A stretch of DNA of 63,960 nucleotides, the filler included, from Octopus bimaculoides (taxonomy: Eukaryota): NCBI RefSeq assembly GCF_001194135.2. It is 5 parts of 5 records of this genome, joined end to end, with 100 filler letters (N's around TTAATTAATTAA, not from the genome) between each part and the next. Parts side by side here need not be neighbours in the genome. Positions count along the whole stretch, not along the records: positions 13,100 to 43,303 come from NC_069000.1; 4 more parts are not named here. One strand, written 5' to 3'. How positions within the stretch are numbered: position 1 is the stretch's first letter; each line of letters begins with the position of its first letter. Below, piece by piece: positions 16,466-42,946 of the stretch. A program made the translations under genes and the position numbers. The notes under the pieces are model-generated. The model saw nothing but the letters and a program-made list of their open reading frames with translations. It was not told where the DNA came from and searched no databases.

Positions 16466-16657
16466 CTCTATATAAACATCAGAAAGTTCAATATCACATT
16501 TGCTTATGAGAGCCTCGTTATCACGACTCCAGGTACCATTGCTTAGTAAAGCATTTTTTTTGTGGAATTTTCTGTCGTCAACCGCTTTCTTTCTCCAACT
16601 TAGGCTCCGTTTCAATCTGGGTTCCTGAGTGGGTTGTTTTGCTTTATTAAGGGCATT
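16466..16657 (-). CDS. ITPR-like: ITPR-like exon, variable region (NALNKAKQPTQEPRLKRSLSWRKK...SKCDIELSDVYIE)
   Basis: Acceptor ttacatctcccag|, donor GAG|gtaagc; 192 nt, phase 0-0, open. Support is from splice signals and phase rather than a recognisable motif. Confidence 0.68.
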
Positions 16658-19600
16658 CTGGGAGATGTAATTATATGAGATAGGGAGTAATGAGTAAATT
16701 GAGCGAGTGTAAATAATTTGAAACAAAAATTCAATTTGCGTATTGAATGATAAAGAAAATAACTGCACTGAAAAAAATAATTCTGAATATCTCCGTTCTT
16801 TCTGCAATTTAAGATTATTTTCAAGCTGGGATTCGGAACGGGCTGTTTAGTTTTATTAAGGCCATTCTGGAGGATGCAATTCAAGAGATAGGGCAAGATG
16901 GTTAAAATAAATAATTTAAAAAAAAACAATATGAAACAAAAAAAATTAAAAATACATATTGAGTGATAAAAAAAAATGGCTGAAAAAAAAAAAATTAATT
17001 GCAGAACATTTCTGCATTTTCTGCAGTTTCAGGGCATTTTAAATTTGGATTTCTGAGTGGGTCCTTCGACTAAATTAAGTGTGGACTTAATTGAATGGTT
17101 AAAACTAATTGTAATAAAAAATTATTTATATCGAATGTTAAACAAAATGGTTGTCTTCTACAAATTTTTATTCTTTCCTCGGCATTAATTTCTGTACAAT
17201 CTCAGTCCTCGGTAAGCTTTGTATCTTGTAATAATTTTTTTTTCACATTATTAAGAATATTCTGGAATAAGAGTGCATCAGGAGTAGCCAATGAAATGAA
17301 TAATTAAAGGAATTAATAAAGACTATAAAAATATGCAAAATGTCTACATGAAAAAGATTCAGATTTATGAAAGTACCTATACAGGGTGGTCCTTTTTTTT
17401 GTTGCTTTATTGAGAACATTCTGAAGTGAGATAGAGAGTGAAGAGTGAGATGGAAGACTTAAAAAGATCAAGTAAATATTCTGAATGTACAGAGAATGAC
17501 AAGCAGGATTCGTGCCTTAAAAATGAAATAAAATTTTAAATAGTTCTAATATTTCTCTACTTCTAAATTCTTCACAACTTCAGCTCCCAGAAGGGCGTTT
17601 TGTTTCATTAAGGGTCTTCTATGATTTGTTAGAGGGTGAGGAGTGAAAGGAACGTTTAAAAATGTAAGAAAATGGATGGAATACTACATAAGATAGCTGA
17701 CGTAACAAAATAGCAATTTTCGAAATAATTCTCATAATGCAATTAGCAAAGTAAATTAAAAAGAAAAATTTCCATGTACACTAAAGCGATTATTGCAATT
17801 GGTATGCTGCTTGATTACTTTACCACAAATCCACAGATTTATCAAGCAGTGAGAACAATAGATTAACATCAATTAGAGCGCCGAGATTGCGGTTTTCAAC
17901 TAAATATTTTAACGTCTAGAGATCAAATCTCATCTCGGTCGACCCCAGTCTTTTATTGATTAAATCGACAAAGGTGATCCTCAAAAATATGAGGTCTTCG
18001 GAATTAGCCGGAGCTGTAGAGCACTGTGCAAAGTGCCCTTTTGTTGTTCGTTCTTACTAAATCTGTCAAAATTCTGCATTCAAATCCGACCTAGGTCTGT
18101 TTTGTCTTATATTCTTCACTGTCGATAAAATAAATCACCAGTAAATTATTGTGGTCCATGGACATCTCCACAAAATCGTAACCATTTAAGGGGCGAGGCT
18201 TCGATTCCCACTTGCACTAATGCCTCTTTTTTGTGTCATGGGGGTTTATATGCTCTAATATTAGACTATTTTCTCTAATCAATATACGGTGAAGGCTTAT
18301 AATTCTATGTACAAATAAGATTCATAATTAATGGGCAGATAGCCACACTGAAAATTATAATACGAAAGCGATTGTGTTTCCTAAAGCTACAAAATATATT
18401 ATTCTATGCGAACAGACGACAGGAAATGTAACACAGTGTGTAGGCTGCTGTCATATAATGAAGGAACTTGTAGTTGAAGATGTAACCAGCAATAGGGTGA
18501 TGTAGGTTTGGACAACATAAAACTAGCTATTTATGTAAAATGACAAAAGAAAAGTAGGAGTTCTATGAAGATAAAATGGCGGAAAATTAAACGATGAATA
18601 AAGAAAGATGAAAAAAAAATGAAATAGTGTTTTATGAGAAGGCGACATTTTGGCACAAAATGGAGCAATGGATGCAAGCAGACGACAGGGAATTGTTTGT
18701 GTGCAGACGACACAAAATGAAATATGATAATAAATTGTAGCTTCGCATGTTTAATGCAGTATAGTACGGAAGACGAAGGAAACATCAGAAATGATACAGT
18801 AAAAAAGAACGTAGATAATATATATAAAAAAGTAAAAATAATATATGCATACCCATCCATTTAGTCTTTCATTTCGAAGTTTTGTTTCATAAAATTGGAT
18901 TTGCTGGAAAATAAAGAAAAAACAGTAAAAACAAACTAAGGTTTGGGCTTATCAAAATAATAAATATTTAAGTTTAAAACTATTTTTTTATTTCAGTTTC
19001 CGAGCATAAATTCACTCACTCATTTCTTCGATTATCCATTTTTTTTTAGTTCGTTATAATATACAGTCTATGCCTGAAAAATATATCCGGGTATTTCTCA
19101 ATATATGAAACTATTAGTAGCGCTTAAATATACGTAAATACATTATATATATATATATATATATANNNNNNNNNNNNNNNNNNNNNNNNNNNNNNNNNNN
19201 NNNNNNNNNNNNNNNNNNNNNNNNNNNNNNNNNNNNNNNNNNNNNNNNNNNNNNNNNNNNNNNNNNNNTATATACGCATATATATATGTACATTATCCAA
19301 ATTTTCCTTTCATGACAAGTGAACTGAGGACGGTTTGACTGTTATTTCTAGTAAATTGGCAGACCATGAACATACTTCTACACTAAGTTGTTATGGTAAC
19401 CATGTTGATGAAGATGGGAAAGGCAATGTTGATGCTGATGGGATGATGTGGAGAGATAGATAGATAGATAGAGAAAGAGAGAGGAGAAGGCAGAAAAGGA
19501 AGGACAGGAAGAGTGGAAACAGAATGCTACGTGTGATGGTGACGTCCATGATACTGATGGTGATGATGATGACGACGGCGATGACGATGAGAACGTCAAT

Positions 19601-21748
19601 GATGATGATGATGATGATGACGACAATGGTGATGACAGCGATGACGACGAAGATGTCAATGATGATGATGACGATGATGATGACGATCATATCACAACGA
19701 GGCCAACGTGGTCAACGACAAGGATATTGAGGATAATAACGTCGACGACGTCGAGGACGGCGACTACGACGACGCCAACGATGCTGCTGCTGCTGAAGAA
19801 GAAGAAACAATGACTAGGGTGGCGACGACGACGACGATGATGATGACAACAATGACGACCGTGTCGACGGTAAAGATGATGACGATGACGCAGATGAGAG
19901 TGGTACTTGTGGCAGCGACATGGTGATGGGGACTGACTAAAGAAGTAGTGACCTAAAGAGAAACAAAAACCATAAAAAAACCGGAGGTTCTACCCACCTG
20001 TAGTGCTTTACGACCAATTGAGAGGAAGGAGACTTGATTTGACGCTTGGTTCTGTTGTTCTCCATATCTGGTCTTTTTTTGCAGCATTAAATAACGGCTA
20101 GAGAAATGGTGGGGTGGAAAAAAAAAACAAACATAAAATATATTTGTCATACATCGGAGGCGGTGCTGAAAAGTTCCTGACTTTGAGTAAAAGAGAATAC
20201 AGATTCACACACTTATTGCAGCAGTCCTTCGGTTTTTCTAAGGCCTGTAAAAGAACTCGGAATATTGGGCCTTCAGCCAGGCGTTTCGCAATAGCCTAAA
20301 AGACAGGAACTTTTCAGCATGACCTCATACGTACAAACACACACACACACACACATATTATATATATATGTGTGTTTGTGTGTGTGTGTTGGCGGGCGCG
20401 CACGTATTATAACTGAAAGACTTCGATTTCCTGTACTCAGAGTTGCTCGATCCTGATCGTCAGCTGATAAACCGAATCTGGTTTTCTTTTGAAAATCCAC
20501 TGAATATTTTTTGAAAAAGGAAATGAAAGTTTGAACAAAACACTTATCCTTATGTTCTTTCGTTTAAAAACCTTTGTGAACGACACCTGCAAAGATGGCT
20601 GTTTCAAGATCACGCTTTTCATTTAATTTCTGGTTCTCGTGGTAATATCGTTATAAACGTCATAAACGTCCACACAATCGAAGACATGAAATTGCGTTCC
20701 TATTTAAGCAACGTTCCAAAATAATACATTTGACTAATCTTTTTAAAACATTTTGTGATCATGTAACACCAAAACTTGTGACTTCCAAACTCACCAGACC
20801 TAAATGTCATGGACCACTACTTTTGGAGAATCGACATCCTCATAACCACATAACTTAACTGAAGGTCGCCATTTTCCAGGTGATGTCCGAATGAATAAAG
20901 AACACATAGTACATGCATGTTAACGATTCTGGTGCCGAATTGAAGCACATAAGCGGATAATGAGACATGCAGCAAGTGCAATACCTGTGACAGGAATCGA
21001 ACCGACGAATCCTCGTCTGAGGCTCATCTAGAGTTAAGTGTCTTCGACAGACATGCAACAAATAAAATCTAGTACGGGTGACGGGAAAAGAGCAGAAGCA
21101 TTATTTTCTATTACTTCTAAACCCTGTCATTTCTTATTTCTATCGATTTTAAAATGCATGCTTTCCCTATGTGAAGCAGTTAACAATAAAGGAATAATAA
21201 CAATAATAATAATGATGATGATGATGATAATGATGATGATGGATATTAATAATAATAACAATCATAATAATAAAAATCCTTTCTACTATAGACACAAGGA
21301 CTCAAATTGTTGGCGAGGGGACTAGTCGATTACATCGACCCCAGTGTTTTACTGGTATTTAATTTATCGACTCCGAAAGGATAAAAGGCAAAGTCGACTT
21401 CAACTTAATTTGAACTCAAAACGTAACCGCTGACGAAATACTGCTAAGTATTTCGCCCGGCGTGCTAACGTTTCTGCCAGCTCGCAGCCCTTATAATAAT
21501 AATAATAATAACCCTTTCTATTATAGGCAGAAGGCCCGAAATTTGGGAGAGGGGGATAGTCAAGTACATCGACTCCAGGACGCAACTGGTACTTAATTTA
21601 TCGACCCCGAAAGGATGAAGGGCAAAGCCGACCTCGGCGGAATTTGAACTCAGAACGGGCGAAATACCACTAAGCCCGGCGTGCTAACGATTCTACCAAC
21701 TCGCCACCTTAATATTAGTAATAATAATATATAATAATAATAATAATA

Positions 21749-21822
<74 letters not shown>

Positions 21823-24800: not shown

Positions 24801-25880
24801 ATTTATAGGAAAGAGGTGGATGATAAAGAAAATAAGATAAGAACAATATATGAATGATTACTTACTGTTCTTTGATAGAATTTGTGGAAACCTGCATTCT
24901 GTATCGAACTGCCATGAAGAATACCTCTTCTCTCGTAGACAGGAAGTAATCATACAAAGATTTCTAAGAAAAAATATAAAAATAATATATATATAGTTGA
25001 AATTTATAGGAAAATAAAAGACAAAGACAGGTGTATGAACAACAGGCAAGTGTATTAGTTTGACGCTCGGGAAAATGAAAAAGTCTTTTACGTTTCGAGC
25101 CTACGCTCTTCATCGGAAAGGAATAAGAGAAAATAAACAGAGAGAGAGAATGAAAAGAACTTGTAGATTTCAGAGGTCCAGCATGGCGAATATATATGTA
25201 TATATATAAAAGAAATAGTGGTACGATAAGGCACCAATGTTTGCTGGAAATAACTGTCGATAACGACACGACACTATGTAAAGCTTCACTGATATATATA
25301 TACTGGCAAAGGTATATGAGCGCAGCGAACACAGAAAATGTTCGTCTTACCTCAAAGCAGAATATCGTAAAAATGGACAACTCAGAATTAATAATCTAGG
25401 ACCCGAGTTTTGGACGTAAATTTGATTAGCCCTCATCAGCTACATTCACATGTGACTAAAGTGATACTATTGTATTGCAACGATATTTAAAATTTTTATA
25501 GAAAGCATTTTCATTGATCTCGGTTGTTAACGGCCAGGCGTTCAACCGAATATAATGGCAAGATGTAGCGATATTTTAAGATTTCGTCACATGTGAATCT
25601 ATATACATATATATAAAACGTCAGTAGATCATATATCCGAAAAAGAAGCGTACTCTAAAGGCCAGAGACGCAATGTATTTATAGGAAGTTAATCATATAA
25701 CTGGTCATGGTTTCACATTCATAAAGCACATGGCCTTATAGACGGCTCGTCGGACTCTAGTGACTGCAGGCATATAATCCGCGGCCATTAAAATCCCGAC
25801 GAGTGGTCTATAAGACTATGTGCTTTACAGATGTGAAACCATTGGCCACTCTATGATCGGCCATATAATTAACTTCATAC

Positions 25881-28900: not shown

Positions 28901-30402
28901 GCAAGGCTTTGGTCAGCCCGAGGCTATAGTAGAAGACACTTGCCCATGAGGTCACGCAGCGGGACTGAACCCGGAGCTATGTGACTGAGAAACGAGCTTC
29001 TTACCACACAGCCATGAACGCTCTTTGTTTTATATATTTTTTGCTAGGATGTGATCTAAATGCGATTTGGTTGCTATTTCTAGTAGGTCGAACTACCACG
29101 CAGAGTATAGGACATTGAGGATAGAACAAGGAATAACTTACCATTTTTGATGTTTTTACACTTGAGTTGTGCTGCCACCGTGTTGTGACCACAGTAGACA
29201 ATCTTACAATTCCTGGCAAATGTATGGAACTTGGCGTTGAGTTCAATCTCAGCTGCATAATATTCCATGTTGCCCTTAAAGTATACGAAACATAAGGTTA
29301 TTAGCTTCTTACATATGAAAACAGCTCTGGATTTACGTTAGTTTTAAAATTTACTTAACAGAGTCTCGATAAAATTGACATACGAAAACAAGGTAATTGG
29401 TTCTTTATATGAGAACAAGGCCCTGAAATTAGCTTTTAAATAGATTTTTGTAGTACTTAATGAAATAAAGAAGGTAACCAGTTTCTTACTTTTGATTATG
29501 GGGTGCTGGAATTGTGTTAGTTTTAAAAAATTATTTTGTAAGATTTGGATAAAATATACAGACTATAACAATGTATAAGGTTTCTTTCATTAGTACAAAA
29601 CCCTTAAATTATTTGATTCTTTAAATTTATTTGGTGAAGTTTGTATAAAATATACAGACTATAAAGTAGTTGGTTTCTTGCATTAAAACAAGACACTCGA
29701 ATTGCATTAGTTTTTAAAACTTATTTAAAAGAGTCTCGAAATAAATGTAGACGATATGTTAACTGGCTTCTTACACTAAACAACAAGGCCCTTTAGCTTA
29801 GGTATATTCTCTAAATTTATTTGGTAGGGTCTTGATGTTTGACCAAAAGAACCGGCTATTGCAAGCAAAATTAAATATTGAAACAAGAGCACTCAGAGAG
29901 CGCAAACCTCCGCCAATGCAACACCAACGTCCTCTCAATGATTATCCGGAGAGAATTTTCAAAATGAGGTTATCTGAAATAAACTCGATTGCTCTCACAA
30001 ACAAGAATACTAAAAATGAACCCGACCGCTCTCAAAATTTTAGTAAAAAAATAGGAAAAATAATTCAGAATCCTTGTCTGGTACTGGATCGATCCCAAAA
30101 TCTAATCAGTTCGTGCCAGTCACGAGGCCAAACATCTCTGGAAGTTTCATACGAAACCATTCAGTAGTTCTTGAGATATCTTGTCCACAGACAAACAAAC
30201 AAACACGACTGAAAACAATACTTCAGCCTTCGTTAAGGCGGAGGTAATAATAATCCTTTCTACTATAGACATAAGGCCTGAAATTTAGGGAAGCGGGGAG
30301 AGTCGATTACTCAACTGGCGGATTTTGAACTCAGAACGTAGCGACGGGCGAAATACTGCTAAGTATATCGTCCATCGTGCTAACGATTCTGTCAGCTCAC
30401 CG

Positions 30403-30444
<42 letters not shown>

Positions 30445-30565
30445 TGATAATAATATTTCCTTACACGTCTTACTGCTATTTGGTCATCTTCAAAGCTTAT
30501 TTCACTTGAAAATTTTTCCAAGATTCCAATTAGCATCTGAAATAATAATAATAACAATAATAATA

Positions 30566-30601: not shown

Positions 30602-31377
30602 AGCCACAAGCCCAGTAATTTGTATAGCACCAACACAAGTACTAGACTTGTAATCGATTTTAACGAGTTAGAACAGTGCTCCGCAACCTTTTTTCACTTG
30701 CGGCACACTTATGTTCTTTTCAAAATTTGGCGGCACACCTGAACTAGAAATATGGCTAAGAGTATAGGGGAAAAAAATTATACTCAGATTACACTGCGGC
30801 ACATATAGCATCATCTCGTGACACACCAAGCATCGTCTCATGACACACCAGCGTTCCGCACCATTCCGGTTGCGGAGCGCTAATCTAAGATAATACTTTC
30901 TTTCCTAAATGCCAGAAAGGTGCCACAGAGCACGTTACATTGAAATAGGAAGAATGAGAAAGAAAATAAAAACGAGATAAAGACGGTACACATCGTATAA
31001 AAACGTGTTAATCTCCAGGAAACGAAGTATCACATAGCATCGACAAAGGAACCTCGCTGAGCCAGAATTACGCTGATCATCAAAAACAATTAACTCCTGT
31101 TTAAGGTGTACGATGATAGTAGATTCAGTTGCTCACCAATTCTACCGAATATATAGGCGGGGAGGGGAATAGAACGGAACAAGATAACTGTTGTGGTACT
31201 CACAGTTTTTGAAACACTTGAGGTTGACACGACACTTGTTAAAGCTGACACTACATTTTTCATATGGAATGGTTTAACGAGCATTGGGCTGATGAGTTCA
31301 CAGAACGTCTTGAAACAAAGAGTAAACATTAATAAGAATATCACAGCTTTCAAATTCTGTGTATGTGTAAACATGTT

Positions 31378-34232: not shown

Positions 34233-34264
<32 letters not shown>

Positions 34265-37200
34265 GTGGAAATATAAAAGGAGCAAAAATGGTGTAGAATC
34301 AGTATACACCACGTGGCAAAATTATGAAGTGAAAATATGTGTTAAACTTATATAAAAAAAGGGGAAGAGAAATGCCTTCATTCCACATAATAACACAGTC
34401 CACTTTCTAATTAATTAATTAAAAAGTAAATTATTTAAACTGAAGCGAAACATAAATATTCAGTGTGTGTGTTTTATTGGCAGAATGACCCTCCCAAAAT
34501 ACAACGATATTCATTCTAGCAAGCAGTTTCACATCAGGAATCTTGTGAAACAGACACGAAGATACATGGACACATACATAGATATTGTCTCACACTCAAG
34601 TGCACATACATGCACCCGAAAATTCTCTCTCTCACACACACATACACAAGTAAATCTCATAAAAGCTTGCTCACAAAATTCATTGAGTATATTTATTCTT
34701 TTTCTGGAATTACGGAGATGTACTTGCATAGCAAATGACCTGATCTGAGATCGTGTGCTGAAACAAAAACAATTGCAGCGTGGAAGGTGTTTATAAGCCG
34801 TTTAAAAACACACAAAAACCGTTAGATTCACTTCAACATTTAAATTTAATTTGCCAAAGTATTTCTGTCGCTTTGAGATCGCAACTTGTTCACTGACAAA
34901 ATTCTGAGATTCAGCACGGAATTTTGTCAGTGAACAGGTCGTCGCAGTCTCAAAGAGACGAAAATATTTTGACAAATTAAATTTAAATGTTGAAATGAAT
35001 CTAACGGTTTCTGTGTGTTTTTAAATGGCTCATAAACTCCTTCCACGCTGCAATTGCTTATATTTATTTTATAAAATGACATATCTATGTCTACATAAAT
35101 TAGTTTACATGCAAGAAAAAGAGATTTGTATTCATTTCATACAATGTAGTGTCTATGCATATAAAAATTAGTTTACGCGCCAAAGAAAAATAGTGACAGC
35201 AGATTTATTAAACATATTCATTTTATACAATGTAATGCCTATGAATATAAAATTAAATGTAATGTTTAAAAAGTAAATATGTTAATGTTTTTATAATATA
35301 CAATGCGATATCTATGCATATAAGAATTTGCTTACGTCTAAAAGAAAAAGAGTGACAGAAGATCTATTTTAATGCATTTATTTATGTAATGTCTATTTTT
35401 TATTTTCTCTTTGTTTCAGTTATTGGGCTGCGATCATGCTGGGGCACTACCATAAAGGGGTTTAAGTCGAACAAATCTACCCAAGTAAGTATTTTTGTTT
35501 TAAAGTCGCATGCTTAGTCTTTCGGTTATTTTCGTCGAACCGGTAGTTTACGGGGTACGTAAACTAAACAACACCGTCTGTCAAGCAGTAAGTAGGTGGA
35601 CAAACACAGAAACAAAGGTACACACATTTATATCCATCCATCCACCTATCTATCTGTCTGTCTGTTTGTCTATCTGTCTATCAGTAATTGTATATATACA
35701 ATGCAATGAATTAACTTACATGCAAGAAGGGGAGTACACCTTCCAGTACATAGTAGAGATTGCCGTGGACCATTCCTCTTGTGTCACTGCTATCAGCAAT
35801 AGCACTGCAAAGGGAGACAAGAAAGTTACAGACAATGCACATTACACTGAAACAGCTTGTTATTAACTACAGTACCAATGTAACGGAGATTTACAATAAA
35901 TATATTTGTCGAATACTGTTTCTCGCTCAGGGATTTAAAACTAGTGGTTTTTCTCTTTATGAGATCAGCAACTGTGTGTCGCTTTAAAAGTATATACTGG
36001 AGCAAGGTCAAGTGGCTGCCATCTCTAGCCGGTGCTTAACCTGTACCGAGGAAAGGAAATTACCCAGAAACCATTGGTCTGCAGGTATCACTGAAGCTAG
36101 TATAATACTGTAAGCAATAAACTCTCTTGCTCACAGTATACGGACACAGACCATGTGTCGTAGCCAGCCGGGAAAGATGTTTTCCTGAGGCTAAACAGTA
36201 GACTTTATTTATAGAATCATATCCTTACGTATTGCTACAAGAAGTCGGGCCACTTTTCTCTTTTGTCCCGCCAGTCTCATGGTTACAATACAGAAGAATT
36301 CAGCAGTTTGGAATGAAACTTAAAGTGGTTAGTTTCGTCATTTTTACAACTCTTCAGGACGCATCATCTCTTCCTTCCAAGCCGCGGAAGGCAAGTATAT
36401 TTCGTAGGAGATAATGTCGGATTTTCTGATACAATGCTTCTGTTTTGTAATTGTTTTAGTCATTGAGCTGTGGCCAGATTGAGGGCACCGCCTGGGAGGG
36501 CTGTAGCCAAACAAAAGATCCACAACAACAACACCAATAATAACGACCACAGTGTGAAGACCGATCACAATAACAACAACACCAACAATAGCAGCAACAA
36601 CATCATATTATGAACAGCAGTAACAACAACAACAATAATAACAACAACAGTGGTAACAGCATCAGCAACAAGTACAACAGTGACAACAACAAAAGCAAGA
36701 AGTACACCGACGATAAAGCGAATGATTATTTTGTGAATAAAAGAAGGATTTTAAAAGCATGAAAAGAGTAACCTTTTGTCTGGATAAGTTTTCAGCAAAG
36801 AAGTGGTCCTTTCTCGGTAACGGGTGACAGACTCAAACAGCTCATTGACAGTTTGAACAGTCGTGGAAAGGAAGTCCCAAATTTTTCTGTCAGAAAAGAT
36901 AAATAAATAAGTTAATTAATGGATAAATAAATGAAGAAAAAAAAAAAAAGAATAAATGAATAAGCAATAATTGCTGCGTCAAATTTGTACGGTTTTTCTG
37001 TTCTCAAAAATAACTGCAAAAAGTGTTTGAACTAAATTCCGAAATGTCTACAGGTACCGTCAGTGTTTCAATATATTTGGTAATGTTAAGACACAATTAC
37101 TGCTCATTCATTATTCTTTATCTATCTATCTATCTATCCTTCTATCTATCTATCTATGTTGCGTTGAGTTCTTGAGCAAAATACTCCATCTCACTTTGTT

Positions 37201-38483
37201 CTGCGACCACTTCGACACCTGACGCGTGGCGCACAGTGCCCCTGTTGAGACAACGTCGATTTGATGGAGGGAGGGAGTTAATGGTCGGCACTGACATTTG
37301 ATCACTATAAAAAAATCATTTGTGCAGGTCATTCGGCAGAGGGTTGAATGTTCATGCGTAGTTTTCGATGGGAGAGTCCATTATTATTGAAGCGATGATC
37401 TGGCAGAATCAGCACGCCGGACAAAATGCTTAGCGACATTTCGTCCGACTTAACTCTCAATCTCTCTCTTCCTTCCTTTCTTTATTTCTTTCTGTCTTTC
37501 TTTCTTTCTTTCTCTCTTTCTCTTCCTCTCGCTGTCTTTCTCACGATCTCACTCTCTCATTCTCTCTCTCCCTCTCTCACTCCCTCTTTCATTCTCTCTC
37601 CCTCGCTATCTTTCTCTCTCACTTTCTCTGTTTCTCTCCCTTCTCTTCAGTCTGTCTATCTTTCTCTCTCTCACTTCCTCTCTATTTTTCTATCTCCTCC
37701 TCCTCCGGATCCCCCTTCCCCTATCTCTCTCTGACAAGCTTCCGCACAGCTTGTTTTACCCAAATTTCATTTGCAAGATTATCGTTGATGAGAAACTTCG
37801 GTTGGAGAAACTTGCCCAAGATGCAACAAGGAGGGATCGAACAAAAAAACCCACATCGTTTTAAATTTAACTTCTAAACGACGGAGACAGCCACCCCATT
37901 CATCAGTATGGGCGATGATGTTGACGATGATGATGTTGGTGGTGGTGGCAGTGATCGTGGTGATGGTGATGGTGATGAAGATGATGATGAAAATGATGAT
38001 GATGATGGTGGTGGCGGTGATCGTGACGATGATGATGATGATGGTGATGAAGTTGAGGATGATAAAGTTGTTGATGGTGGGAGTGGTGGGTGATGGTGAT
38101 GATGGTGATGACGATGATTGATGATGATGATTATTAATATGATGATGATGGTGACGATGACGATGATGATGCTGCTGATGATGATGATTATGATGGTTGT
38201 GGTGGTGGTGATGGTGATGATGATGATGATGATGATAATGGTAATGATGGTTACGNNNNNNNNNNTGGTGATGGTGATGATGATGATGATGATGATAATG
38301 GTAATGATGGTTACGGTGACAGTGATGGTGGTGATGATGATGAAGATGATGATGATGATGATGATGGTGGTGATGATGAAGATGATGACGAGGAGGACAG
38401 TGAAACGTTTGTCGCAATTATTGATCGCAACAGTATTACTTCAACATTTCGGTTATCACCCTTCACATATACGCAACTACACA

Positions 38484-38524
<41 letters not shown>

Positions 38525-38745
38525 ACACACGCACACAAGAAGCGTGTTTATTTTCCTAAGTTTCATCCACATAGTACAAGCTCTGTTCTATTTACGGCAG
38601 CACTGACCCATATCCTACATACAACTCTCTTAATGGAGTGACGTATGTTATTGCATGGCGAAGGGTGTAGCGAGGCGCTTTGTTGGAGGTGGGGGAAGAT
38701 GCGTGTGTGCATGTGCGTGCAAATGCCATGTTGTGTGTGTGTATG

Positions 38746-38792
<47 letters not shown>

Positions 38793-39207
38793 NNNNNNNN
38801 NNNNNNNNNNNNNNNNNNNNNNNNNNNNNNNNNNNNNNNNNNNNNNNNNNNNNNNNNNNNNNNNNNNNNNNNNNNNNNNNNNNNNNNNNNNNNNNNNNNN
38901 NNNNNNNNNNNNNNNNNNNNNNNNNNNNNNNNNNNNNNNNNNNNNNNNNNNNNNNNNNNNNNNNNNNNNNNNNNNNNNNNNNNNNNNNNNNNNNNNNNNN
39001 NNNNNNNNNNNNNNNNNNNNNNNNNNNNNNNNNNNNNNNNNNNNNNNNNNNNNNNNNNNNNNNNNNNNNNNNNNNNNNNNNNNNNNNNNNNNNNNNNNNN
39101 NNNNNNNNNNNNNNNNNNNNNNNNNNNNNNNNNNNNNNNNNNNNNNNNNNNNNNNNNNNNNNNNNNNNNNNNNNNNNNNNNNNNNNNNNNNNNNNNNNNN
39201 NNNNNNN

Positions 39208-39265
<58 letters not shown>

Positions 39266-40052
39266 TTGCAATAAATAATCTTCAATGAGAATTGACGAAA
39301 CAAATGTCGAGTGCCGGACTAAATGTATTTCGTTATTTAATTTAATTCCAATGATATTTGAACTTAAAATAGAAAATGAAAAAAGGGAAAAACATTATCG
39401 GCGGAGCTTTATGAGATTTTTTTTGTTTTGTAGCTGTGTTCCTCCTCGACAAATTTTGTTTCTCGTTTATGAAATCTGAATAAATTTTAAAATCTTCTCA
39501 GAAATATGATGTTGGAAAGTCAAACAGAAGAAAAACGAATTTATCTGAAAACCAAAGAAATTTTGTATGTATGTACGCATGTATGTATGTACGCATGTAT
39601 GTATATATGCATGTATGTTGGAGGAGACACGTGGGATAGAGAGTCGCTGAAGAGGTCACAGAGAGTGTGAAAAAAATTCAGACAAAGGACACTAAGATAA
39701 GAACAATAATAAACCTGAAGTAAAGAACAAATATATAGTGTTGTGTCGGGATAGAGTCATACTGCCTTAATATCTAACACACTCACCGGTTCAATTTCCA
39801 GTCATTTATCATACATATATATTTCAAAACTTTTCGTTGCTTTTGCATCCTTGTCAATGGATGTTGACTCAACATCCATTGACAAGGTTGCAAAAGCGAC
39901 GAAAATTTATGAATAATAAATGAGTGGAAACTGAACCGGTGAGTGTGTTAGATAATAAGGCATTAAGACAATATGACTCTCCCCAGACACAACAAAATTT
40001 GTTTCAACACACGAATTTACATAAAGAATCTTGTAAACCCGATACAAAAACG

Positions 40053-40103
<51 letters not shown>

Positions 40104-41698
40104 NNNNNNNNNNNNNNNNNNNNNNNNNNNNNNNNNNNNNNNNNNNNNNNNNNNNNNNNNNNNNNNNNNNNNNNNNNNNNNNNNNNNNNNNNNNNNNNNN
40201 NNNNNNNNNNNNNNNNNNNNNNNNNNNNNNNNNNNNNNNNNNNNNNNNNNNNNNNNNNNNNNNNNNNNNNNNNNNNNNNNNNNNNNNNNNNNNNNNNNNN
40301 NNNNNNNNNNNNNNNNNNNNNNNNNNNNNNNNNNNNNNNNNNNNNNNNNNNNNNNNNNNNNNNNNNNNNNNNNNNNNNNNNNNNNNNNNNNNNNNNNNNN
40401 NNNNNNNNNNNNNNNNNNNNNNNNNNNNNNNNNNNNNNNNNNNNNNNNNNNNNNNNNNNNNNNNNNNNNNNNNNNNNNNNNNNNNNNNNNNNNNNNNNNN
40501 NNNNNNNNNNNNNNNNNNNNNNNNNNNNNNNNNNNNNNNNNNNNNNNNNNNNNNNNNNNNNNNNNNNNNNNNNNNNNNNNNNNNNNNNNNNNNNNNNNNN
40601 NNNNNNNNNNNNNNNNNNNNNNNNNNNNNNNNNNNNNNNNNNNNNNNNNNNNNNNNNNNNNNNNNNNNNNNNNNNNNNNNNNNNNNNNNNNNNNNNNNNN
40701 NNNNNNNNNNNNNNNNNNNNNNNNNNNNNNNNNNNNNNNNNNNNNNNNNNNNNNNNNNNNNNNNNNNNNNNNNNNNNNNNNNNNNNNNNNNNNNNNNNNN
40801 NNNNNNNNNNNNNNNNNNNNNNNNNNNNNNNNNNNNNNNNNNNNNNNNNNNNNNNNNNNNNNNNNNNNNNNNNNNNNNNNNNNNNNNNNNNNNNNNNNNN
40901 NNNNNNNNNNNNNNNNATATATATATGATTATATATATACGATAAGTGTCAGACTGACCTCAGCACAAGTTGCCAATAAATCTACGAGTGAAATGAAGTA
41001 AGTCCGATGTCCTTTTTCAGTTTTGTTGGTCAATATTCTTTCTCTGAAATAGAAATAGAAGAGATATAATAAAGTCTAATGAGAAGATGAGAGAGAAATA
41101 GGTGTCTAAATACAAATGTTTATTATGAACATACCTCACTTCTCTGTCTTGATCGAGAACATAAGCGGCCTTCTTAAAGTTCTGCATGATATATTTCATG
41201 ACCAAGGTTTGGTTGTGTTTCAAGGTCACGTCCAGTCCTTCCACTTTGACCAAAGCTCGCAAAAGGTCAAGGAATTCGGGTGCATTCTCTTGGTTCTCAG
41301 AAGCGAGGATAACTATTTTCTGAATTTGCCTTGAGTTGATTTTCAGGCATGTAAGCTGGTTGCCTACGAATACCTTGGAAGATAAAATTTAGATGATATA
41401 AGTATATGTTTGTGTATGTGTGTGTGTTTGTGTATTGTCATTTTATCCCCTTTTATTTCTCTCTCTCTATCACTCTCTCTCCCTTCCTCTGCACACAGGC
41501 AAAAGCAAAGATATGCTATTTCTGTTTTTAATATCAAAATTCTTTTTGTAATATACACATACGTACACACACTCGCAGTTATAATAGAGGTGTACATGAA
41601 CGCATCTGTGTCTATGTCTATAAGTACCTCAATTTCTCTTTCTAAATTTCTCTTTTTCTTACTCTCTCACACTCTCACGATTTATTTGCCAGCATGTG

Positions 41699-41732
<34 letters not shown>

Positions 41733-42946
41733 ATCTATCTATCGTTTGTGTGTATATATATATATATATATANNNNNNNNNNNNNNNNNNNNNNNNNNNN
41801 NNNNNNNNNNNNNNNNNNNNNNNNNNNNNNNNNNNNNNNNNNNNNNNNNNNNNNNNNNNNNNNNNNNNNNNNNNNNNNNNNNNNNNNNNNNNNNNNNNNN
41901 NNNNNNNNNNNNNNNNNNNNNNNNNNNNNNNNNNNNNNNNNNNNNNNNNNNNNNNNNNNNNNNNNNNNNNNNNNNNNNNNNNNNNNNNNNNNNNNNNNNN
42001 NNNNNNNNNNNNNNNNNNNNNNNNNNNNNNNNNNNNNNNNNNNNNNNNNNNNNNNNNNNNNNNNNNNNNNNNNNNNNNNNNNNNNNNNNNNNNNNNNNNN
42101 NNNNNNNNNNNNNNNNNNNNNNNNNNNNNNNNNNNNNNNNNNNNNNNNNNNNNNNNNNNNNNNNNNNNNNNNNNNNNNNNNNNNNNNNNNNNNNNNNNNN
42201 NNNNNNNNNNNNNNNNNNNNNNNNNNNNNNNNNNNNNNNNNNNNNNNNNNNNNNNNNNNNNNNNNNNNNNNNNNNNNNNNNNNNNNNNNNNNNNNNNNNN
42301 NNNNNNNNNNNNNNNNNNNNNNNNNNNNNNNNNNNNNNNNNNNNNNNNNNNNNNNNNNNNNNNNNNNNNNNNNNNNNNNNNNNNNNNNNNNNNNNNNNNN
42401 NNNNNNNNNNNNNNNNNNNNNNNNNNNNNNNNNNNNNNNNNNNNNNNNNNNNNNNNNNNNNNNNNNNNNNNNNNNNNNNNNNNNNNNNNNNNNNNNNNNN
42501 NNNNNNNNNNNNNNNNNNNNNNNNNNNNNNNNNNNNNNNNNNNNNNNNNNNNNNNNNNNNNNNNNNNNNNNNNNNNNNNNNNNNNNNNNNNNNNNNNNNN
42601 NNNNNNNNNNNNNNNNNNNNNNNNNNNNNNNNNNNNNNNNNNNNNNNNNNNNNNNNNNNNNNNNNNNNNNNNNNNNNNNNNNNNNNNNNNNNNNNNNNNN
42701 NNNNNNNNNNNNNNNNNNNNNNNNNNNNNNNNNNNNNNNNNNNNNNNNNATATATATATATATAGTGAGAATTCTTCGTCTTACCTCCCTCAAGGCAATG
42801 GCCAGCTGTGATTCGACCACTTTTACCTCAAGAAGTGTGTCAAGTTTCTCAAACATTTCGCTTTGGACTTGGTTGTTTTCTTTGATTAATAACTTCAATA
42901 GATACAACGTCTTCTCCAGAATGGTCTTCATCCCTCTGTACTGATC
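16466..42946 (-). CDS. ITPR-like: Partial multi-exon gene: divergent IP3 receptor-like / RIH-domain Ca2+ release channel (15 exons seen; N- and C-terminal exons not found in window)
   Basis: Manually spliced exons with GT-AG ends and matching phases. The first three exons give 162 codons and the last twelve give 1+480x3 nt with no stop. The peptide parallels IP3R motifs from memory: VFVGNQ..FLDLLRALVKVEG..KHNQ..VMKY (second RIH domain), YFISLVDLLATCAE, LDIKCLQLLRAIV, IQNAINSHNA, NRNVQKSLYDYF, EEVFFMAVRYRMQ. Confidence 0.92.
16617..17700 (-). repeat. Degenerate 160-220-bp tandem array containing copies of the exon acceptor
   Basis: Motif (g)ctttattaagggcattct recurs at about 16645, 16855, 17075, 17250, 17410 and 17610. 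Confidence 0.75.
19998..20097 (-). CDS. ITPR-like: ITPR-like exon (RYLMLQKKTRYGEQQNQASNQVSFLSIGRKALQ)
   Basis: Acceptor caccatttctctag|, donor CAG|gtgggt; 100 nt; phase matches upstream exon (ca+c = His). Confidence 0.78.
20150..20329. mobile_element. Mariner-type MITE
   Basis: Inverted termini gctgaaaagttcctg (20165-20179) / caggaacttttcagc (20304-20318). Confidence 0.8.
20690..21000 (+). mobile_element. Tc1/mariner transposase C-terminal remnant
   Basis: Degenerate NSPDLNVMDHYFW motif (SPDLNPxD/E-type). Confidence 0.6.
23041..23310 (+). mobile_element. SINE family 3 (tRNA-like head gtggcttagtggttagggtgttggactc); second copy ~50123-50345
   Basis: A/B-box-like head and shared gtgttcttgagcaaaacacttcatttcac core. 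Confidence 0.82.
23311..23500 (+). mobile_element. 3' fragment of an RLE-type non-LTR retrotransposon (HERO/CRE-like)
   Basis: VETFSALG followed by (frameshifted) EPHVSEWLCQCISLAIIRGNAFSIL, resembling the QRxSxAxxRGNA end of RLE domains. Confidence 0.6.
23850..24740. repeat. ~20-bp minisatellite (tgactgaccgttaaaa-like) interrupted by two SINEs
   Basis: About 18 degenerate units at 23850-24210; units resume at 24690-24740. Confidence 0.8.
24866..24963 (-). CDS. ITPR-like: ITPR-like exon (KSLYDYFLSTREEVFFMAVRYRMQVSTNSIKE)
   Basis: Acceptor tattttttcttag|, donor CA|gtaagt; 98 nt; parallels IP3R SEKFFKVFYDRMK. Confidence 0.92.
25085..25120 (-). ncRNA. Minimal hammerhead ribozyme-like motif, core variant CCGAUGA, GUA site
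   Basis: Reverse complement reads cuuu-CCGAUGA-a-gagc guag gcuc-GAA-ACGU-A-aaag; same repeat family as 1-200 and 31440-31600. Confidence 0.65.
25680..25880. repeat. Foldback/MITE hairpin
   Basis: atggtttcacat..aaagcaca..cttatagac..ctcgtcgg vs ccgacgag..gtctataag..tgtgcttt..atgtgaaaccat. Confidence 0.8.
26368..26524 (-). CDS. ITPR-like: ITPR-like exon (QTDCIREIQNAINSHNAIITSLPHLARKSEAIIREVLSFIVIMLFNANRNVQ)
   Basis: Acceptor ttcttcttcctattcag|, donor CAA|gtaagt; 157 nt. Confidence 0.92.
26734..26892 (-). CDS. ITPR-like: ITPR-like exon (ISIKAHTSSRSKCAANEDLDIKCLQLLRAIVMNDERKLPEDWETRSSTPKIK)
   Basis: Acceptor cattaaacag|, donor AA|gtaagc; 159 nt; LDIKCLQLLRAIV parallels IP3R LCIKVLQTLREM. Confidence 0.9.
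27942..28080 (-). CDS. ITPR-like: ITPR-like exon (YTSIGGDEELPLGDEFQSFVRCFVAQNEKKPTKKYAPAKKLVDLL)
   Basis: Acceptor catgtttttgttgcag|, donor GC|gtaagt; 139 nt. Confidence 0.9.
28144..28530 (+). mobile_element. SINE family 2 (ggcggcgagctggcagaaacgttagcacgccgggcg...). Other copies: ~8950-9130 -, 9700-9900 +, 10950-11150 -, 21275-21490 -, 21500-21710 -, 24240-24430 -, 24475-24690 +, 30255-30405 -, 51765-52080 +, 57860-58080 -
   Basis: Recurrent gttctgagttcaaattccgccgaggtcgactttgcctttcatcctttcggggtcgataaa consensus. Confidence 0.88.
29142..29274 (-). CDS. ITPR-like: ITPR-like exon (GNMEYYAAEIELNAKFHTFARNCKIVYCGHNTVAAQLKCKNIKN)
   Basis: Acceptor tttcgtatactttaag|, donor G|gtaagt; 133 nt; joins next exon (g+aa = Glu). 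Confidence 0.88.
29882..30248 (+). mobile_element. Non-autonomous Helentron-type element (HINE/DINE-1-like)
   Basis: Subterminal inverted repeats acctccgcc (29906-29914) / ggcggaggt (30237-30245) with (ACAA)n tract near the 3' end. Confidence 0.6.
30465..30536 (-). CDS. ITPR-like: ITPR-like exon (MLIGILEKFSSEISFEDDQIAVRR)
   Basis: Acceptor tattattatttcag|, donor CGT|gtaagg; 72 nt, phase 0-0; fills the gap between the neighbouring exons. Confidence 0.8.
30673..30882. mobile_element. hAT-like MITE
   Basis: Termini cagtgctccgcaacc / ggttgcggagcgct. Confidence 0.7.
31204..31308 (-). CDS. ITPR-like: ITPR-like exon (TFCELISPMLVKPFHMKNVVSALTSVVSTSSVSKT)
   Basis: Acceptor tactctttgtttcaag|, donor ACT|gtgagt; 105 nt, phase 0-0. 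Confidence 0.85.
31522..31557 (-). ncRNA. Minimal hammerhead ribozyme-like motif, core variant CUGUUGA, GUU site
   Basis: Reverse complement reads cuuu-CUGUUGA-a-gagc guag gcuc-GAA-ACGU-U-aaag. Confidence 0.6.
31997..32833 (-). mobile_element. Mariner (Mos1-like) transposase remnant running into an N gap
   Basis: ORF 32241-32639: KVMLSIW..GVVYF.LLP..TINSD.Y, NARP, HPPYNPDLAPSNYHLF; TIR-like attgggttgacaagaaagtaatttcgg at the left end. Confidence 0.9.
34089..34175 (-). CDS. ITPR-like: ITPR-like exon (VFYMLYYMPDKTLFSSEITITENLAKGLV)
   Basis: Acceptor tttgtttcttttaag|, donor GTG|gtaagt; 87 nt, phase 0-0. Confidence 0.85.
34770..35056. repeat. Foldback palindrome, ~135-bp arms with 14-nt loop
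   Basis: caattgcagcgtggaagg...cactgacaaaattc / gaattttgtcagtg...ccttccacgctgcaattg. Confidence 0.9.
35720..35804 (-). CDS. ITPR-like: ITPR-like exon (AIADSSDTRGMVHGNLYYVLEGVLPFLH)
   Basis: Acceptor cttgtctccctttgcag|, donor CAT|gtaagt; 85 nt. Confidence 0.87.
36773..36886 (-). CDS. ITPR-like: ITPR-like exon (KIWDFLSTTVQTVNELFESVTRYRERTTSLLKTYPDK)
   Basis: Acceptor ttatcttttctgacag|, weak donor AG|gttact; 114 nt; phase joins the next exon (ag+t = Ser). Confidence 0.82.
37900..38395. repeat. Compound (GAT/GGT)n trinucleotide tract; similar tracts at 19540-19900 and 21720-21850
   Basis: Directly visible; source of the poly-M/D/H ORFs in the track. Confidence 0.95.
39739..39993. repeat. Foldback palindrome, ~125-bp arms with 1-nt centre
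   Basis: ...ccttgtcaatggatgttga c tcaacatccattgacaagg...; ctaacacactcaccggttc / gaaccggtgagtgtgttag. Confidence 0.9.
40959..41043 (-). CDS. ITPR-like: ITPR-like exon (ERILTNKTEKGHRTYFISLVDLLATCAE)
   Basis: Acceptor ttctatttctatttcag|, donor GAG|gtcagt; 85 nt; phase matches previous exon across a 91-nt intron; LVDLLATCAE resembles IP3R LVELLAVCTE. Confidence 0.92.
41135..41373 (-). CDS. ITPR-like: ITPR-like exon (VFVGNQLTCLKINSRQIQKIV...ALVKVEGLDVTLKHNQTLVMKYIMQNFKKAAYVLDQDREVR)
   Basis: Acceptor ttttatcttccaag|, donor AG|gtatgt; 239 nt; RIH-domain-like motifs. Confidence 0.93.
42785..42946 (-). CDS. ITPR-like: ITPR-like exon (DQYRGMKTILEKTLYLLKLLIKENNQVQSEMFEKLDTLLEVKVVESQLAIALRE)
   Basis: Acceptor ttgtttttcactag|, donor GAG|gtaaga; 162 nt, phase 0-0. 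Confidence 0.9.

What the first reader, a model, noticed from the sequence alone, without database searches (positions are those of the whole stretch)
16466..42946. Hidden 15-exon segment of a divergent IP3-receptor-like Ca2+ channel
No full-length ORF shows it; the exons are 72-239 nt and buried in repeats. Spliced by hand they give about 640 aa in two phase-consistent blocks covering the second RIH domain to just before the RIH-associated domain. Motifs such as GGDEELPLGDEFQ, GHNTVAAQL and KCLQLLRAIVMNDERKLPEDW differ strongly from vertebrate/insect canonical IP3R. This suggests one of the poorly characterised non-canonical invertebrate IP3R/RyR-family paralogues (inference).
Basis: partly seen in the sequence, partly recalled or inferred. 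Interest (0 to 1): 0.7.

Follow-up and report, generated by a model that had tools for sequence, protein, structure and literature searches.

The report
Partial non-canonical IP3-receptor-like channel gene
The window holds 16 short minus-strand exons coding for the middle part of a real but unannotated calcium-channel gene of the non-canonical "IP3R-B" type; many other molluscs have this gene, so it is a sound gene call rather than a new kind of thing.

Summary
On the minus strand, 42946 to 16466, I rebuilt 16 exons of 51-239 nt. All have AG/GT splice sites and matching phases, and none contains a stop. They give two blocks of 162 and 497 aa. About 62 aa between the blocks is missing and probably lies in assembly gaps. 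Every N gap falls in an intron.

Block A passes Pfam's threshold for the RIH domain. The segment ends about 20 residues before the RIH_assoc domain of its orthologues.

The closest relatives are full-length proteins of 2,700-2,900 aa with the IP3R domain set. The nearest is a cuttlefish-project transcript (67% identity, 100% bootstrap). Next come gastropod and bivalve proteins labelled "ITPR-like" (54-59%). All family members fetched are at most 25% identical to IP3R1. One oyster species carries a separate canonical-type gene as well. So this is a paralogue of the canonical receptor and matches the published IP3R-B family, which vertebrates lost.

Molluscs have three such paralogue groups. This gene falls with group 1, and the cuttlefish genomic locus I fetched is group 2.

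I rate it a new member of a known kind, of modest interest.

The parts
42785..42946 (-). Exon 1 (162 nt, phase 0-0): DQYRGMKTILEKTLYLLKLLIKENNQVQSEMFEKLDTLLEVKVVESQLAIALRE. Second RIH domain.
   Evidence: Acceptor cactag|, donor |gtaaga. tblastn against 73 family proteins, best 3e-17.
41135..41373 (-). Exon 2 (239 nt, ends in phase 2): VFVGNQLTCLKIN...YVLDQDREV. Core of the RIH domain.
   Evidence: Donor |gtatgt restores the frame into exon 3. 75-78% identical to P0006 and P0191, E 6e-44. Directly follows exon 1 in transcript L002.
40959..41043 (-). Exon 3 (85 nt): (R)ERILTNKTEKGHRTYFISLVDLLATCAE. End of block A.
   Evidence: HMM 36 bits. Blocks A and B are separated after this exon.
36887..40958 (.). 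Interval in which about 188 nt (62 aa) of coding sequence is missing. It contains N gaps 40104-40916, 38793-39207 and 38256-38265.
   Evidence: L002 positions 4107-4294 have no counterpart in the window. The family HMM finds nothing in the readable DNA on either strand.
36773..36886 (-). Exon 4 (114 nt, starts with 1 nt of a split codon): KIWDFLSTTVQTVNELFESVTRYRERTTSLLKTYPDK.
   Evidence: tblastn with 40 family proteins, best 7e-07. Splice sites.
35720..35804 (-). Exon 5 (85 nt): SAIADSSDTRGMVHGNLYYVLEGVLPFLH.
   Evidence: 73% identical to P0191, 8e-09. tblastx match to cuttlefish locus L001.
34089..34175 (-). Exon 6 (87 nt): VFYMLYYMPDKTLFSSEITITENLAKGLV.
   Evidence: The 12-N gap at 34221-34232 lies 46 nt upstream of the acceptor, inside the intron.
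31204..31308 (-). Exon 7 (105 nt): TFCELISPMLVKPFHMKNVVSALTSVVSTSSVSKT.
   Evidence: Abuts exons 6 and 8 in L002.
30465..30536 (-). Exon 8 (72 nt): MLIGILEKFSSEISFEDDQIAVRR.
29142..29274 (-). Exon 9 (133 nt, ends in phase 1): GNMEYYAAEIELNAKFHTFARNCKIVYCGHNTVAAQLKCKNIKN.
   Evidence: 86% identical to P0191, 9e-18. Splice sites.
27942..28080 (-). Exon 10 (139 nt): EYTSIGGDEELPLGDEFQSFVRCFVAQNEKKPTKKYAPAKKLVDLL(A).
26734..26892 (-). Exon 11 (159 nt): ISIKAHTSSRSKCAANEDLDIKCLQLLRAIVMNDERKLPEDWETRSSTPKIK(K).
   Evidence: Acceptor aaacag|T gives the same length as P0191 and cuttlefish P0001.
26368..26524 (-). Exon 12 (157 nt): QTDCIREIQNAINSHNAIITSLPHLARKSEAIIREVLSFIVIMLFNANRNVQ.
   Evidence: 75% identical to P0191, 8e-18.
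24866..24963 (-). Exon 13 (98 nt, ends in phase 2): KSLYDYFLSTREEVFFMAVRYRMQVSTNSIKE.
   Evidence: 82-85% identical to P0191 and the chiton P0188. Donor CA|gtaagt.
19998..20097 (-). Exon 14 (100 nt): (H)RYLMLQKKTRYGEQQNQASNQVSFLSIGRKALQ.
   Evidence: 20 family proteins hit it, best 0.002. Phase and splice sites fit.
18853..18903 (-). Exon 15 (51 nt): QIQFYETKLRNERLNGW.
   Evidence: Matches QIQGYEQKLRRDKFNGW of P0191. Sites ccag| and |gtatgc. This is the weakest exon on statistics alone.
16466..16657 (-). Exon 16 (192 nt): NALNKAKQPTQEPRLKRSLSWRKKAVDDRKFHKKNALLSNGTWSRDNEALISKCDIELSDVYIE. A basic linker just upstream of RIH_assoc.
   Evidence: 46% identical to P0006 1752-1821, 4e-08. A homologous stretch is present in all gastropod and bivalve group-1 proteins but absent from transcript P0191.

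Best explanation
This is a genuine, apparently intact but incompletely assembled, central segment of a gene for a non-canonical IP3-receptor-like channel subunit. It belongs to the 'IP3R-B' branch of the IP3R/RyR superfamily, in mollusc paralogue group 1, and is transcribed from the minus strand.

The segment corresponds to residues about 1105-1765 of a roughly 2,700-2,900-aa protein. That covers the C-terminal 60% of the second RIH domain, the helical armadillo-like modulatory domain (equivalent to IP3R1 about 1186-1915), and a basic, probably disordered linker that ends just before RIH_assoc.

The following is inferred from the full-length orthologues, not from the window. The whole protein has an N-terminal beta-trefoil/MIR ligand-binding region and a C-terminal six-helix channel domain. 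It most likely forms a tetrameric Ca2+-release channel in the ER membrane. The window-encoded domain would be the part that relays N-terminal conformational changes, and regulatory inputs such as phosphorylation of the basic linker, to the Ca2+-sensor and gate.

Whether IP3 is the activating ligand is doubtful. Only 6 of the 11 IP3-contacting residues are kept, and the pore filter is GLIGD rather than GGGVGD.

The source organism is probably a cephalopod distant from cuttlefish, for example an octopod. This is an inference.
For: Gene model:
- 16 exons with canonical splice sites, consistent phases and no stops.
- Junction-by-junction collinearity with transcript L002/P0191.
- 83 of the 88 positions that are at least 95% conserved in 43 relatives are retained, within the range of the other members tested, 93.5-100%.

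Family:
- RIH hit above Pfam's cut-off.
- The exhaustive HMMER search gave 649 hits.
- The full-length relatives have the IP3R domain set, and their best PDB matches are IP3R1-3 at only about 290 bits.
- A profile of this region scores 133 bits on IP3R1 (1186-1520 and 1785-1915) against 17 bits on a RyR.

Non-canonical status.

Placement in the NJ tree:
- Window + P0191, 100% bootstrap.
- Group 2, which includes cuttlefish P0001/P0192, is monophyletic without the window at 100%.
- Groups 1+2 together, 100%. Group 1 including the window, 60%.

P0191 comes from the same SRA run series as P0192, and P0192 is 98% identical to Acanthosepion pharaonis P0001.

Functional residues in the orthologues: S6, the Zn finger and the Ca2+-sensor residues (D/E, E, T) are conserved. 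The RTTGR loop reads R[VIA][MI]DQ and Y567 is S.

Residues 1-681 are 100% identical. Residues 1195-2749 score 2.28 bits per residue, against 2.30 for the identical part.
Against: - Only about a quarter of the gene is in the piece.
- About 62 aa is missing between the blocks, and the N- and C-terminal domains are not present. Intactness of the whole gene is therefore unproven.
- There are no expression data from the source species.
- Group-1 membership has only 60% NJ bootstrap. No ML tree was made, and no canonical mollusc or cephalopod full-length sequence was available.
- Exons 14 and 15 rest on weak similarity (E 0.002 and about 1) plus splice-site and phase fit.
- The equation of this family with the published IP3R-B clade rests on my recollection of Alzayady et al. 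2015, which is not held in the library. It also rests on Capsaspora hit P0022 (XP_004347257.1) not being IP3RA (XP_004347577.1, PMC9522344).
- Foldseek matches of a model of the cuttlefish paralogue fragment to IP3R3 and RyR1 were not significant (E >= 0.07).
- The channel mechanism is inferred from homology only.
Confidence: 0.85

Rival explanations
1. It is simply the ordinary canonical ITPR orthologue of this animal, evolving fast.
For: NCBI names for the relatives read 'inositol 1,4,5-trisphosphate receptor type 1/2/3-like'. The domain set is the same as in IP3R.
Against: - The window peptide is 17.6% identical to IP3R1.
- All relatives fetched, including slowly evolving hemichordate, amphioxus, brachiopod and annelid members, are at most 25% identical to IP3R1 but 35-59% identical to the window.
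- C. virginica has a separate canonical-type gene fragment, 78% identical to the canonical pore against 36-37% for its three proteins of this family.
- Capsaspora and choanoflagellate members fall on the window's side of the tree.
Confidence: 0.03
2. It is a decaying or partial pseudogene copy, or an assembly chimera, rather than a working gene.
For: - No protein from this genome is in the 5.8-billion-protein collection.
- About 62 aa is missing between the blocks.
- Five of 88 highly conserved positions are changed, slightly more than in most relatives.
- The region is very rich in repeats and gaps.
Against: - 1,978 nt of coding sequence in 16 exons has no stop or frameshift, and all 32 splice sites are canonical.
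- Exon order is fully collinear with a relative's mRNA.
- 94% retention of conserved positions is within the family range.
- The missing part coincides with N gaps.
Confidence: 0.08
3. It is a member of the same non-canonical family but not a group-1 orthologue. It could be a cephalopod-specific lineage sister to mollusc groups 1+2.
For: Group 1 including the window has only 60% NJ bootstrap. The window + P0191 pair branches at the base of group 1.
Against: - Identity is highest to group-1 proteins: 54-59%, against 45-54% for group 2 and 37-39% for group 3.
- Exon 16 has homologues only in group-1 proteins.
- Group 2 already contains a cuttlefish member, at 100% bootstrap.
Confidence: 0.12
4. 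It is a ryanodine-receptor-type gene.
For: RIH domains are shared with RyR. The family's pore ends in IGD, as in the RyR motif GGGIGD. Foldseek also lists RyR1 and RyR2 among its weak matches.
Against: Orthologues are 2.7-2.9 kaa and have no SPRY or RyR-repeat domains. The regional profile scores 133 bits on IP3R1 against 17 bits on RyR. PDB matches of P0006 are about 290 bits to IP3Rs and about 100 bits to RyRs.
Confidence: 0.01

Closest known systems
IP3R-B family (Alzayady et al. 2015, Mol Biol Evol 32:2236; cited from my own knowledge, the paper could not be read here)
   Same: - It is a non-canonical branch of the IP3R/RyR superfamily.
- It is found in Capsaspora, choanoflagellates and invertebrates of both protostome and deuterostome lines.
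- No vertebrate member appeared among the hits.
- It has IP3R-like size and domain order.
- The IP3-binding pocket is incompletely conserved. That fits the reported failure of Capsaspora IP3R-B to bind IP3, which I cite from memory.
   Different: Nothing contradicts membership. New here are the cephalopod member, the split of mollusc members into three old paralogue groups, and the GLIGD pore motif of groups 1-2. Whether these were described before could not be checked.
Annotated mollusc 'ITPR type 1/2/3-like' proteins of group 1, e.g. Pomacea canaliculata PVD21456.1 (P0006), Haliotis rufescens (P0171), Crassostrea gigas (P0178)
   Same: They are 54-59% identical over 594 aligned columns and have the same order of motifs. 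They include the basic RLKRSLSWRKK-type linker exon.
   Different: The window's gene is not annotated. Its sequence is a long branch shared with the cuttlefish-project transcript P0191 (67%). Only the central quarter of the gene is available.
Canonical IP3 receptors (vertebrate ITPR1-3, Drosophila Itpr; the IP3R-A branch)
   Same: Domain order is the same: Ins145_P3_rec, MIR, RIH, RIH, RIH_assoc, Ion_trans. S6, the Zn finger and the Ca2+-sensor positions are conserved in the orthologues.
   Different: - About 18-25% identity.
- The IP3-binding loop RTTGR reads R[VIA][MI]DQ, and Y567 is S.
- The GGGVGD filter is replaced by a shorter GLIGD.
- It is a separate gene from the canonical-type one in the same oyster species.
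Ryanodine receptors
   Same: They share RIH and RIH_assoc domains, pore and S6 architecture, and an IGD filter ending.
   Different: This family has no SPRY or RyR-repeat domains and is about half the size. Similarity in the window's region is much weaker (17 bits).

Membership tests
IP3R/RyR superfamily | RIH domain (Pfam PF01365 RYDR_ITPR) | tested here: met
   Spliced block A scores 28.2 bits, E 1.7e-06, above the gathering cut-off of 22.3, over profile positions 77-192/201. The crude unspliced join scored only 13.9 bits.
IP3R/RyR superfamily | RIH_assoc domain, N-terminal Ins145_P3_rec/MIR domains and C-terminal ion-transport domain in the same protein | not testable with these tools
   These parts lie outside the piece. 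tblastn finds nothing beyond 42946 or below 16466. The orthologues P0191, P0006 and P0009 have all of them.
Canonical IP3R (IP3R-A; ITPR1-3/Itpr orthologue) | Close sequence similarity to vertebrate ITPR over the whole length. From established knowledge, fly Itpr is roughly 55-60% identical. | tested here: not met
   - 17.6% identity to IP3R1 over 510 columns.
- phmmer gives 16.9 bits.
- No PDB hit at E<=1 for 303 aa.
- Orthologue P0006 scores 291 bits against IP3R3, whereas ITPR2 scores 2,327 bits against the C-terminal 1,555 aa of ITPR1.
Canonical IP3R (IP3R-A; ITPR1-3/Itpr orthologue) | It is the only IP3R-type gene of its kind in the genome, with no separate canonical copy | tested here: not met
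   C. virginica has a canonical-type fragment, P0293 (78% identical to the canonical pore), in addition to three proteins of this family (36-37%). This was not tested in a cephalopod.
Canonical IP3R (IP3R-A; ITPR1-3/Itpr orthologue) | Complete set of IP3-coordinating residues (R265, T266, T267, G268, R269, R504, K508, R511, Y567, R568, K569) | tested here: not met
   This was tested on orthologues only, because the N-terminus is outside the window. R265, K/R504, K508, R511, R568 and K569 are kept. T266, T267, G268, R269 and Y567 are replaced (R-[VIA]-[MI]-D-Q and S).
Canonical IP3R (IP3R-A; ITPR1-3/Itpr orthologue) | GGGVGD selectivity filter | tested here: not met
   Orthologues of groups 1-2 have RYGLIGDMFE, and group 3 and the hemichordates are more divergent. 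Only S. rosetta keeps GGGLGE. This is alignment-based and lies outside the window.
IP3R-B (Alzayady et al. 2015) | Groups with the second, non-A Capsaspora IP3R homologue and with invertebrate members, apart from vertebrate IP3R1-3 | tested here: met
   Capsaspora CAOG_04510 (P0022, XP_004347257.1) is a family hit at 2e-40. It lies on the window's side of the tree. It is not IP3RA, which is XP_004347577.1 (PMC9522344). That it is the published 'CO.IP3R-B' is inferred by elimination.
IP3R-B (Alzayady et al. 2015) | Absent from vertebrates, present in non-vertebrate deuterostomes and protostomes | tested here: met
   The 92 hits to P0006 and the named hits of the exhaustive search are molluscs, annelids, nemerteans, brachiopod, flatworm, hemichordates, amphioxus, Capsaspora and choanoflagellates. 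The only vertebrate hit is a RyR, at 5e-14.
Ryanodine receptor | SPRY and RyR-repeat domains, about 5,000 aa | tested here: not met
   Orthologues are 2,473-3,071 aa and Pfam finds no SPRY or RyR domains. The regional profile scores 17 bits on RyR2b.

The most novel reading that the evidence does not exclude
Cephalopods, like other molluscs, express at least two members of an ancient IP3R-like channel family that vertebrates lost. With an altered phosphate-binding loop and a GLIGD pore, these may not be IP3-gated at all. They could instead form a third, functionally distinct class of intracellular cation-release channel beside IP3R and RyR. The window's gene would be an unannotated member of that class, carrying a conserved basic, possibly phosphorylated or calmodulin-binding, linker exon that is skipped or lost in cuttlefish.
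Probability: 0.3. Interest if true: 0.6.

Novelty: new member of a known kind. Interest (0 to 1): 0.3.

Why it matters
The finding adds a missing gene model to a poorly assembled genome. No protein from this locus, and no full-length genome-annotated cephalopod protein of this family, turned up in the protein collections searched.

The family itself deserves attention:
- It is as old as the split between Filasterea and animals.
- It is kept in up to three copies in molluscs.
- It is expressed as full-length mRNA in cuttlefish.
- To my knowledge it has no functionally characterised animal member.

For cephalopod neurobiology, a second or third type of ER Ca2+-release channel would matter for how Ca2+ signalling is interpreted. 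NCBI's automatic names ('ITPR type 1/2/3-like') hide the fact that these genes are not orthologues of ITPR1-3.

The window itself adds nothing mechanistic beyond the gene call.

Tried and rejected
- First crude join of ORF pieces. It gave no PDB hit, and RIH scored below threshold. Correct splicing fixed this.
- Search for the missing 62 aa in the readable DNA between 40958 and 36887, on both strands, with a family HMM. Nothing was found.
- Third homologue search, with a canonical pore query meant to fetch full-length canonical mollusc or cephalopod ITPRs. It returned only fragments of at most 212 aa. One oyster fragment was still useful.
- Looking up two mollusc-like canonical fragments in the hope of hitting the cuttlefish project. 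Both came from other samples.
- Structure prediction of the spliced window peptide. The substitute model was the cuttlefish group-2 fragment P0001 (pLDDT 80.6). Its Foldseek matches put IP3R3 and RyR1 on top, but with E >= 0.07 and TM 0.33-0.40. That is consistent but not evidence.
- Reading Alzayady et al. 2015. The paper is not held. Text searches for 'IP3R-B' only found 'IP3R-binding'.
- Scan of intron 13 for the optional 'TLLLKKTRRNKSG'-type micro-exon seen in some gastropod and bivalve isoforms. There was no candidate, but part of that intron is an N gap.
- Other ORFs on both strands. They are microsatellite-coded low-complexity runs or have no Pfam family. There are no tRNAs.
- The repeat finder families D1, D2 and the long 'inverted repeats' are artefacts of N runs.

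Full report
**The piece.** The piece (13100-43303) has 37% G+C and eleven N gaps, and it is full of microsatellites. Mechanical ORF listing shows only low-complexity runs.

**Check of the observation.** A crude join of eight minus-strand ORF pieces found only five relatives in the word-indexed protein collection, and all five were fragments. They came from cuttlefish, Biomphalaria, Macrostomum and an ENA contig. tblastn with them confirmed the exons.

An exhaustive HMMER search with an alignment of these sequences gave 649 hits, including full-length proteins of 2.4-2.9 kaa. tblastn with those proteins, and with 83 further family members, mapped residues about 1079-1821 of Pomacea P0006 onto 42946 to 16451. 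It also revealed more exons. tblastx against the cuttlefish locus L001 did the same.

Reading the splice sites, I built a model of 16 exons. Every exon has an AG acceptor and a GT donor, phases are compatible throughout, and there are no stops. Block A is 486 nt (162 aa). Block B is 1,492 nt (497 aa plus a split first codon).

**Gaps.** No N gap lies in an exon. For six gaps, the flanking exons abut exactly in the mRNA of the closest relative (L002), so nothing coding is lost there. About 188 nt (62 aa) of that mRNA has no counterpart between exon 3 (ends 40959) and exon 4 (starts 36886). A family HMM finds nothing in the readable DNA of that interval. The missing exon or exons are therefore most likely inside the 813-N or 415-N gaps. 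Blocks A and B cannot be joined from this assembly.

**What it is.** Spliced block A passes Pfam's gathering threshold for the RIH domain (28.2 bits against 22.3). Block B has no Pfam family, as expected for the stretch between RIH2 and RIH_assoc.

The relatives P0191, P0006 and P0009 carry Ins145_P3_rec, MIR, two RIH domains and RIH_assoc. P0191 and P0009 also carry Ion_trans, which Pfam does not report for P0006. In these proteins RIH_assoc starts about 20 residues after the point where the window's last exon ends.

A profile of the window's region matches IP3R1 residues 1186-1520 and 1785-1915 at 133 bits. A RyR scores only 17 bits.

Residues 1-681 are 100% identical to 5xa0. Residues 1195-2749 align end to end with 3jav at the same bits per residue.

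**Canonical or not.**
- The window peptide is 17.6% identical to IP3R1.
- P0006 scores 291 bits against IP3R3 over its whole length.
- All 255 family proteins held at that point are at most 25% identical to IP3R1.
- The named relatives are molluscs, annelids, nemerteans, a brachiopod, a flatworm, hemichordates, amphioxus, Capsaspora CAOG_04510 and choanoflagellates. The only vertebrate hit is a RyR.
- In Crassostrea virginica, a separate fragment (P0293) is 78% identical to the canonical pore and C-terminal region. That species' three proteins of this family are 36-37% identical there, lower than a fish RyR at 45%.

So the family is paralogous to the canonical receptor within one species.

The Capsaspora hit is not IP3RA, which is XP_004347577.1 according to PMC9522344. 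As far as I recall, this pattern is the IP3R-B family of Alzayady et al. 2015, described as lost in vertebrates, with Capsaspora IP3R-B not binding IP3. I could not read that paper here.

**Placement in the family.** I made an NJ tree on 594 columns with 200 bootstraps.
- Window + P0191 are sisters at 100%.
- Three mollusc paralogue groups appear.
- Group 2 contains cuttlefish P0001 and P0192, at 100%.
- Group 3 has 100%. Groups 1+2 together have 100%.
- Group 1 including the window has 60%.

Identity of the window peptide is 67% to P0191, 54-59% to group 1, 45-54% to group 2 and 37-39% to group 3.

P0191 is a complete 2,725-aa ORF on an 8,968-nt Logan contig of run SRR29271483. P0192 comes from eight runs of the same series and is 98% identical to Acanthosepion pharaonis P0001. 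P0191 is therefore very probably the cuttlefish group-1 transcript.

Exon-level nucleotide identity to L002 is 70-75% for nine of the ten exons that aligned, and 87.5% over a 48-nt stretch of exon 10. The window therefore comes from a distant relative, probably another cephalopod order. This is an inference.

The cuttlefish genomic locus L001 is the group-2 paralogue, not the orthologue.

**State of the gene.** The window keeps 83 of the 88 positions that are at least 95% conserved in 43 relatives. Other members tested keep 93.5-100%. There is no sign of decay in the part that can be read.

**How it probably works (inferred from the orthologues).**
- S6 (LNIIFGIIVDTFSELRD) and the C-x-x-C...H...H zinc finger are conserved. 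The three Ca2+-sensor positions defined for IP3R1 in PMC9522344 (E1978, E2042, T2657) are conserved as D/E, E and T.
- The filter reads GLIGD in groups 1-2, where IP3R has GGGVGD and RyR has GGGIGD.
- Of the eleven IP3 contacts, R265, K/R504, K508, R511, R568 and K569 are kept. T266, T267, G268, R269 and Y567 are replaced.

I therefore expect a tetrameric ER cation/Ca2+-release channel with Ca2+ regulation. Its activating ligand may not be IP3.

The window encodes the helical domain that couples the N-terminal ligand-binding region to the sensor and gate. It also encodes a basic linker (exon 16, RLKRSLSWRKK). That linker is conserved in gastropod and bivalve group-1 proteins and absent from the cuttlefish transcript. 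A regulatory role for it (phosphorylation, calmodulin binding or alternative splicing) is speculation.

An AlphaFold model of the homologous cuttlefish fragment is all-helical (pLDDT 80.6). Its best, non-significant Foldseek matches are IP3R3 and RyR1.

**Surroundings.** The introns hold a mariner-type transposase fragment, several SINE-like dispersed repeat families and many microsatellites. There are no tRNAs. No other ORF has a Pfam family.

**Verdict.** This is a new, unannotated member of a known and widely annotated, though functionally uncharacterised, family.

Noticed in passing
window 32244-32657 (-): A 138-aa open frame inside intron 6 is a fragment of a mariner-type transposase (Pfam Transposase_1, 72.6 bits, E 2.5e-20). 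A 17-nt tandem repeat lies at its upstream end (32588-32649).
   Followed up: partly
window 21268-21660, 24246-24650, 27002-27064, 28208-29002, 30245-30426, 31507-31972, 35394-35456: Several families of dispersed, SINE-like intronic repeats, with copies 65-83% identical (repeat finder D11-D20). They were not classified.
   Followed up: no
window 35719-34176 versus L001:325-495: The 1.5-kb intron between window exons 5 and 6 is absent from the cuttlefish group-2 paralogue, where the two parts form one exon. The other intron positions compared (exons 7-13) are shared.
   Followed up: partly
window 16466-16657 (exon 16): The basic stretch RLKRSLSWRKK followed by ...NG..RDNEALIS..DIEL has homologues in all gastropod and bivalve group-1 proteins (for example KLRRRLTWRRKSS in Pomacea). 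It is missing from the cuttlefish transcript P0191, so it is either alternatively spliced or lost there.
   Followed up: partly
L001 (Acanthosepion pharaonis CAHIKZ030005385.1, 1071481-1148293): The cuttlefish genome annotation splits its group-2 gene into at least two models: a 480-aa product with a weak RIH hit, and the 291-aa P0001 spanning 57 kb. RNA assemblies from a cuttlefish project give a single 2,862-aa ORF (P0192).
   Followed up: partly
family proteins P0191, P0006, P0178, P0200, P0238 and others (outside the window): Family-wide differences from IP3R and RyR: the phosphate-binding loop RTTGR reads R[VIA][MI]DQ, Y567 is S, and the pore filter is GLIGD in groups 1-2 and more divergent in group 3 and hemichordates. 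S6, the Zn finger and the Ca2+-sensor residues are kept.
   Followed up: partly
window, edges of all N gaps (e.g. 34221-34232, 38793-39207, 40104-40916, 41773-42749): At the gap edges I read, the gap abuts a microsatellite ((TA)n, (GT)n, (AG)n or (TCTA)n). The assembly breaks appear to be caused by simple repeats. Long His/Met/Ile-rich 'ORFs' such as 37779-38417 are translations of (GAT)n-type repeats.
   Followed up: no
(protein collections): No octopod protein, and no full-length genome-annotated cephalopod protein, of this family appeared among the hits, although gastropod, bivalve and chiton orthologues are plentiful. The family seems to be systematically missed or fragmented in cephalopod annotations.
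   Followed up: no
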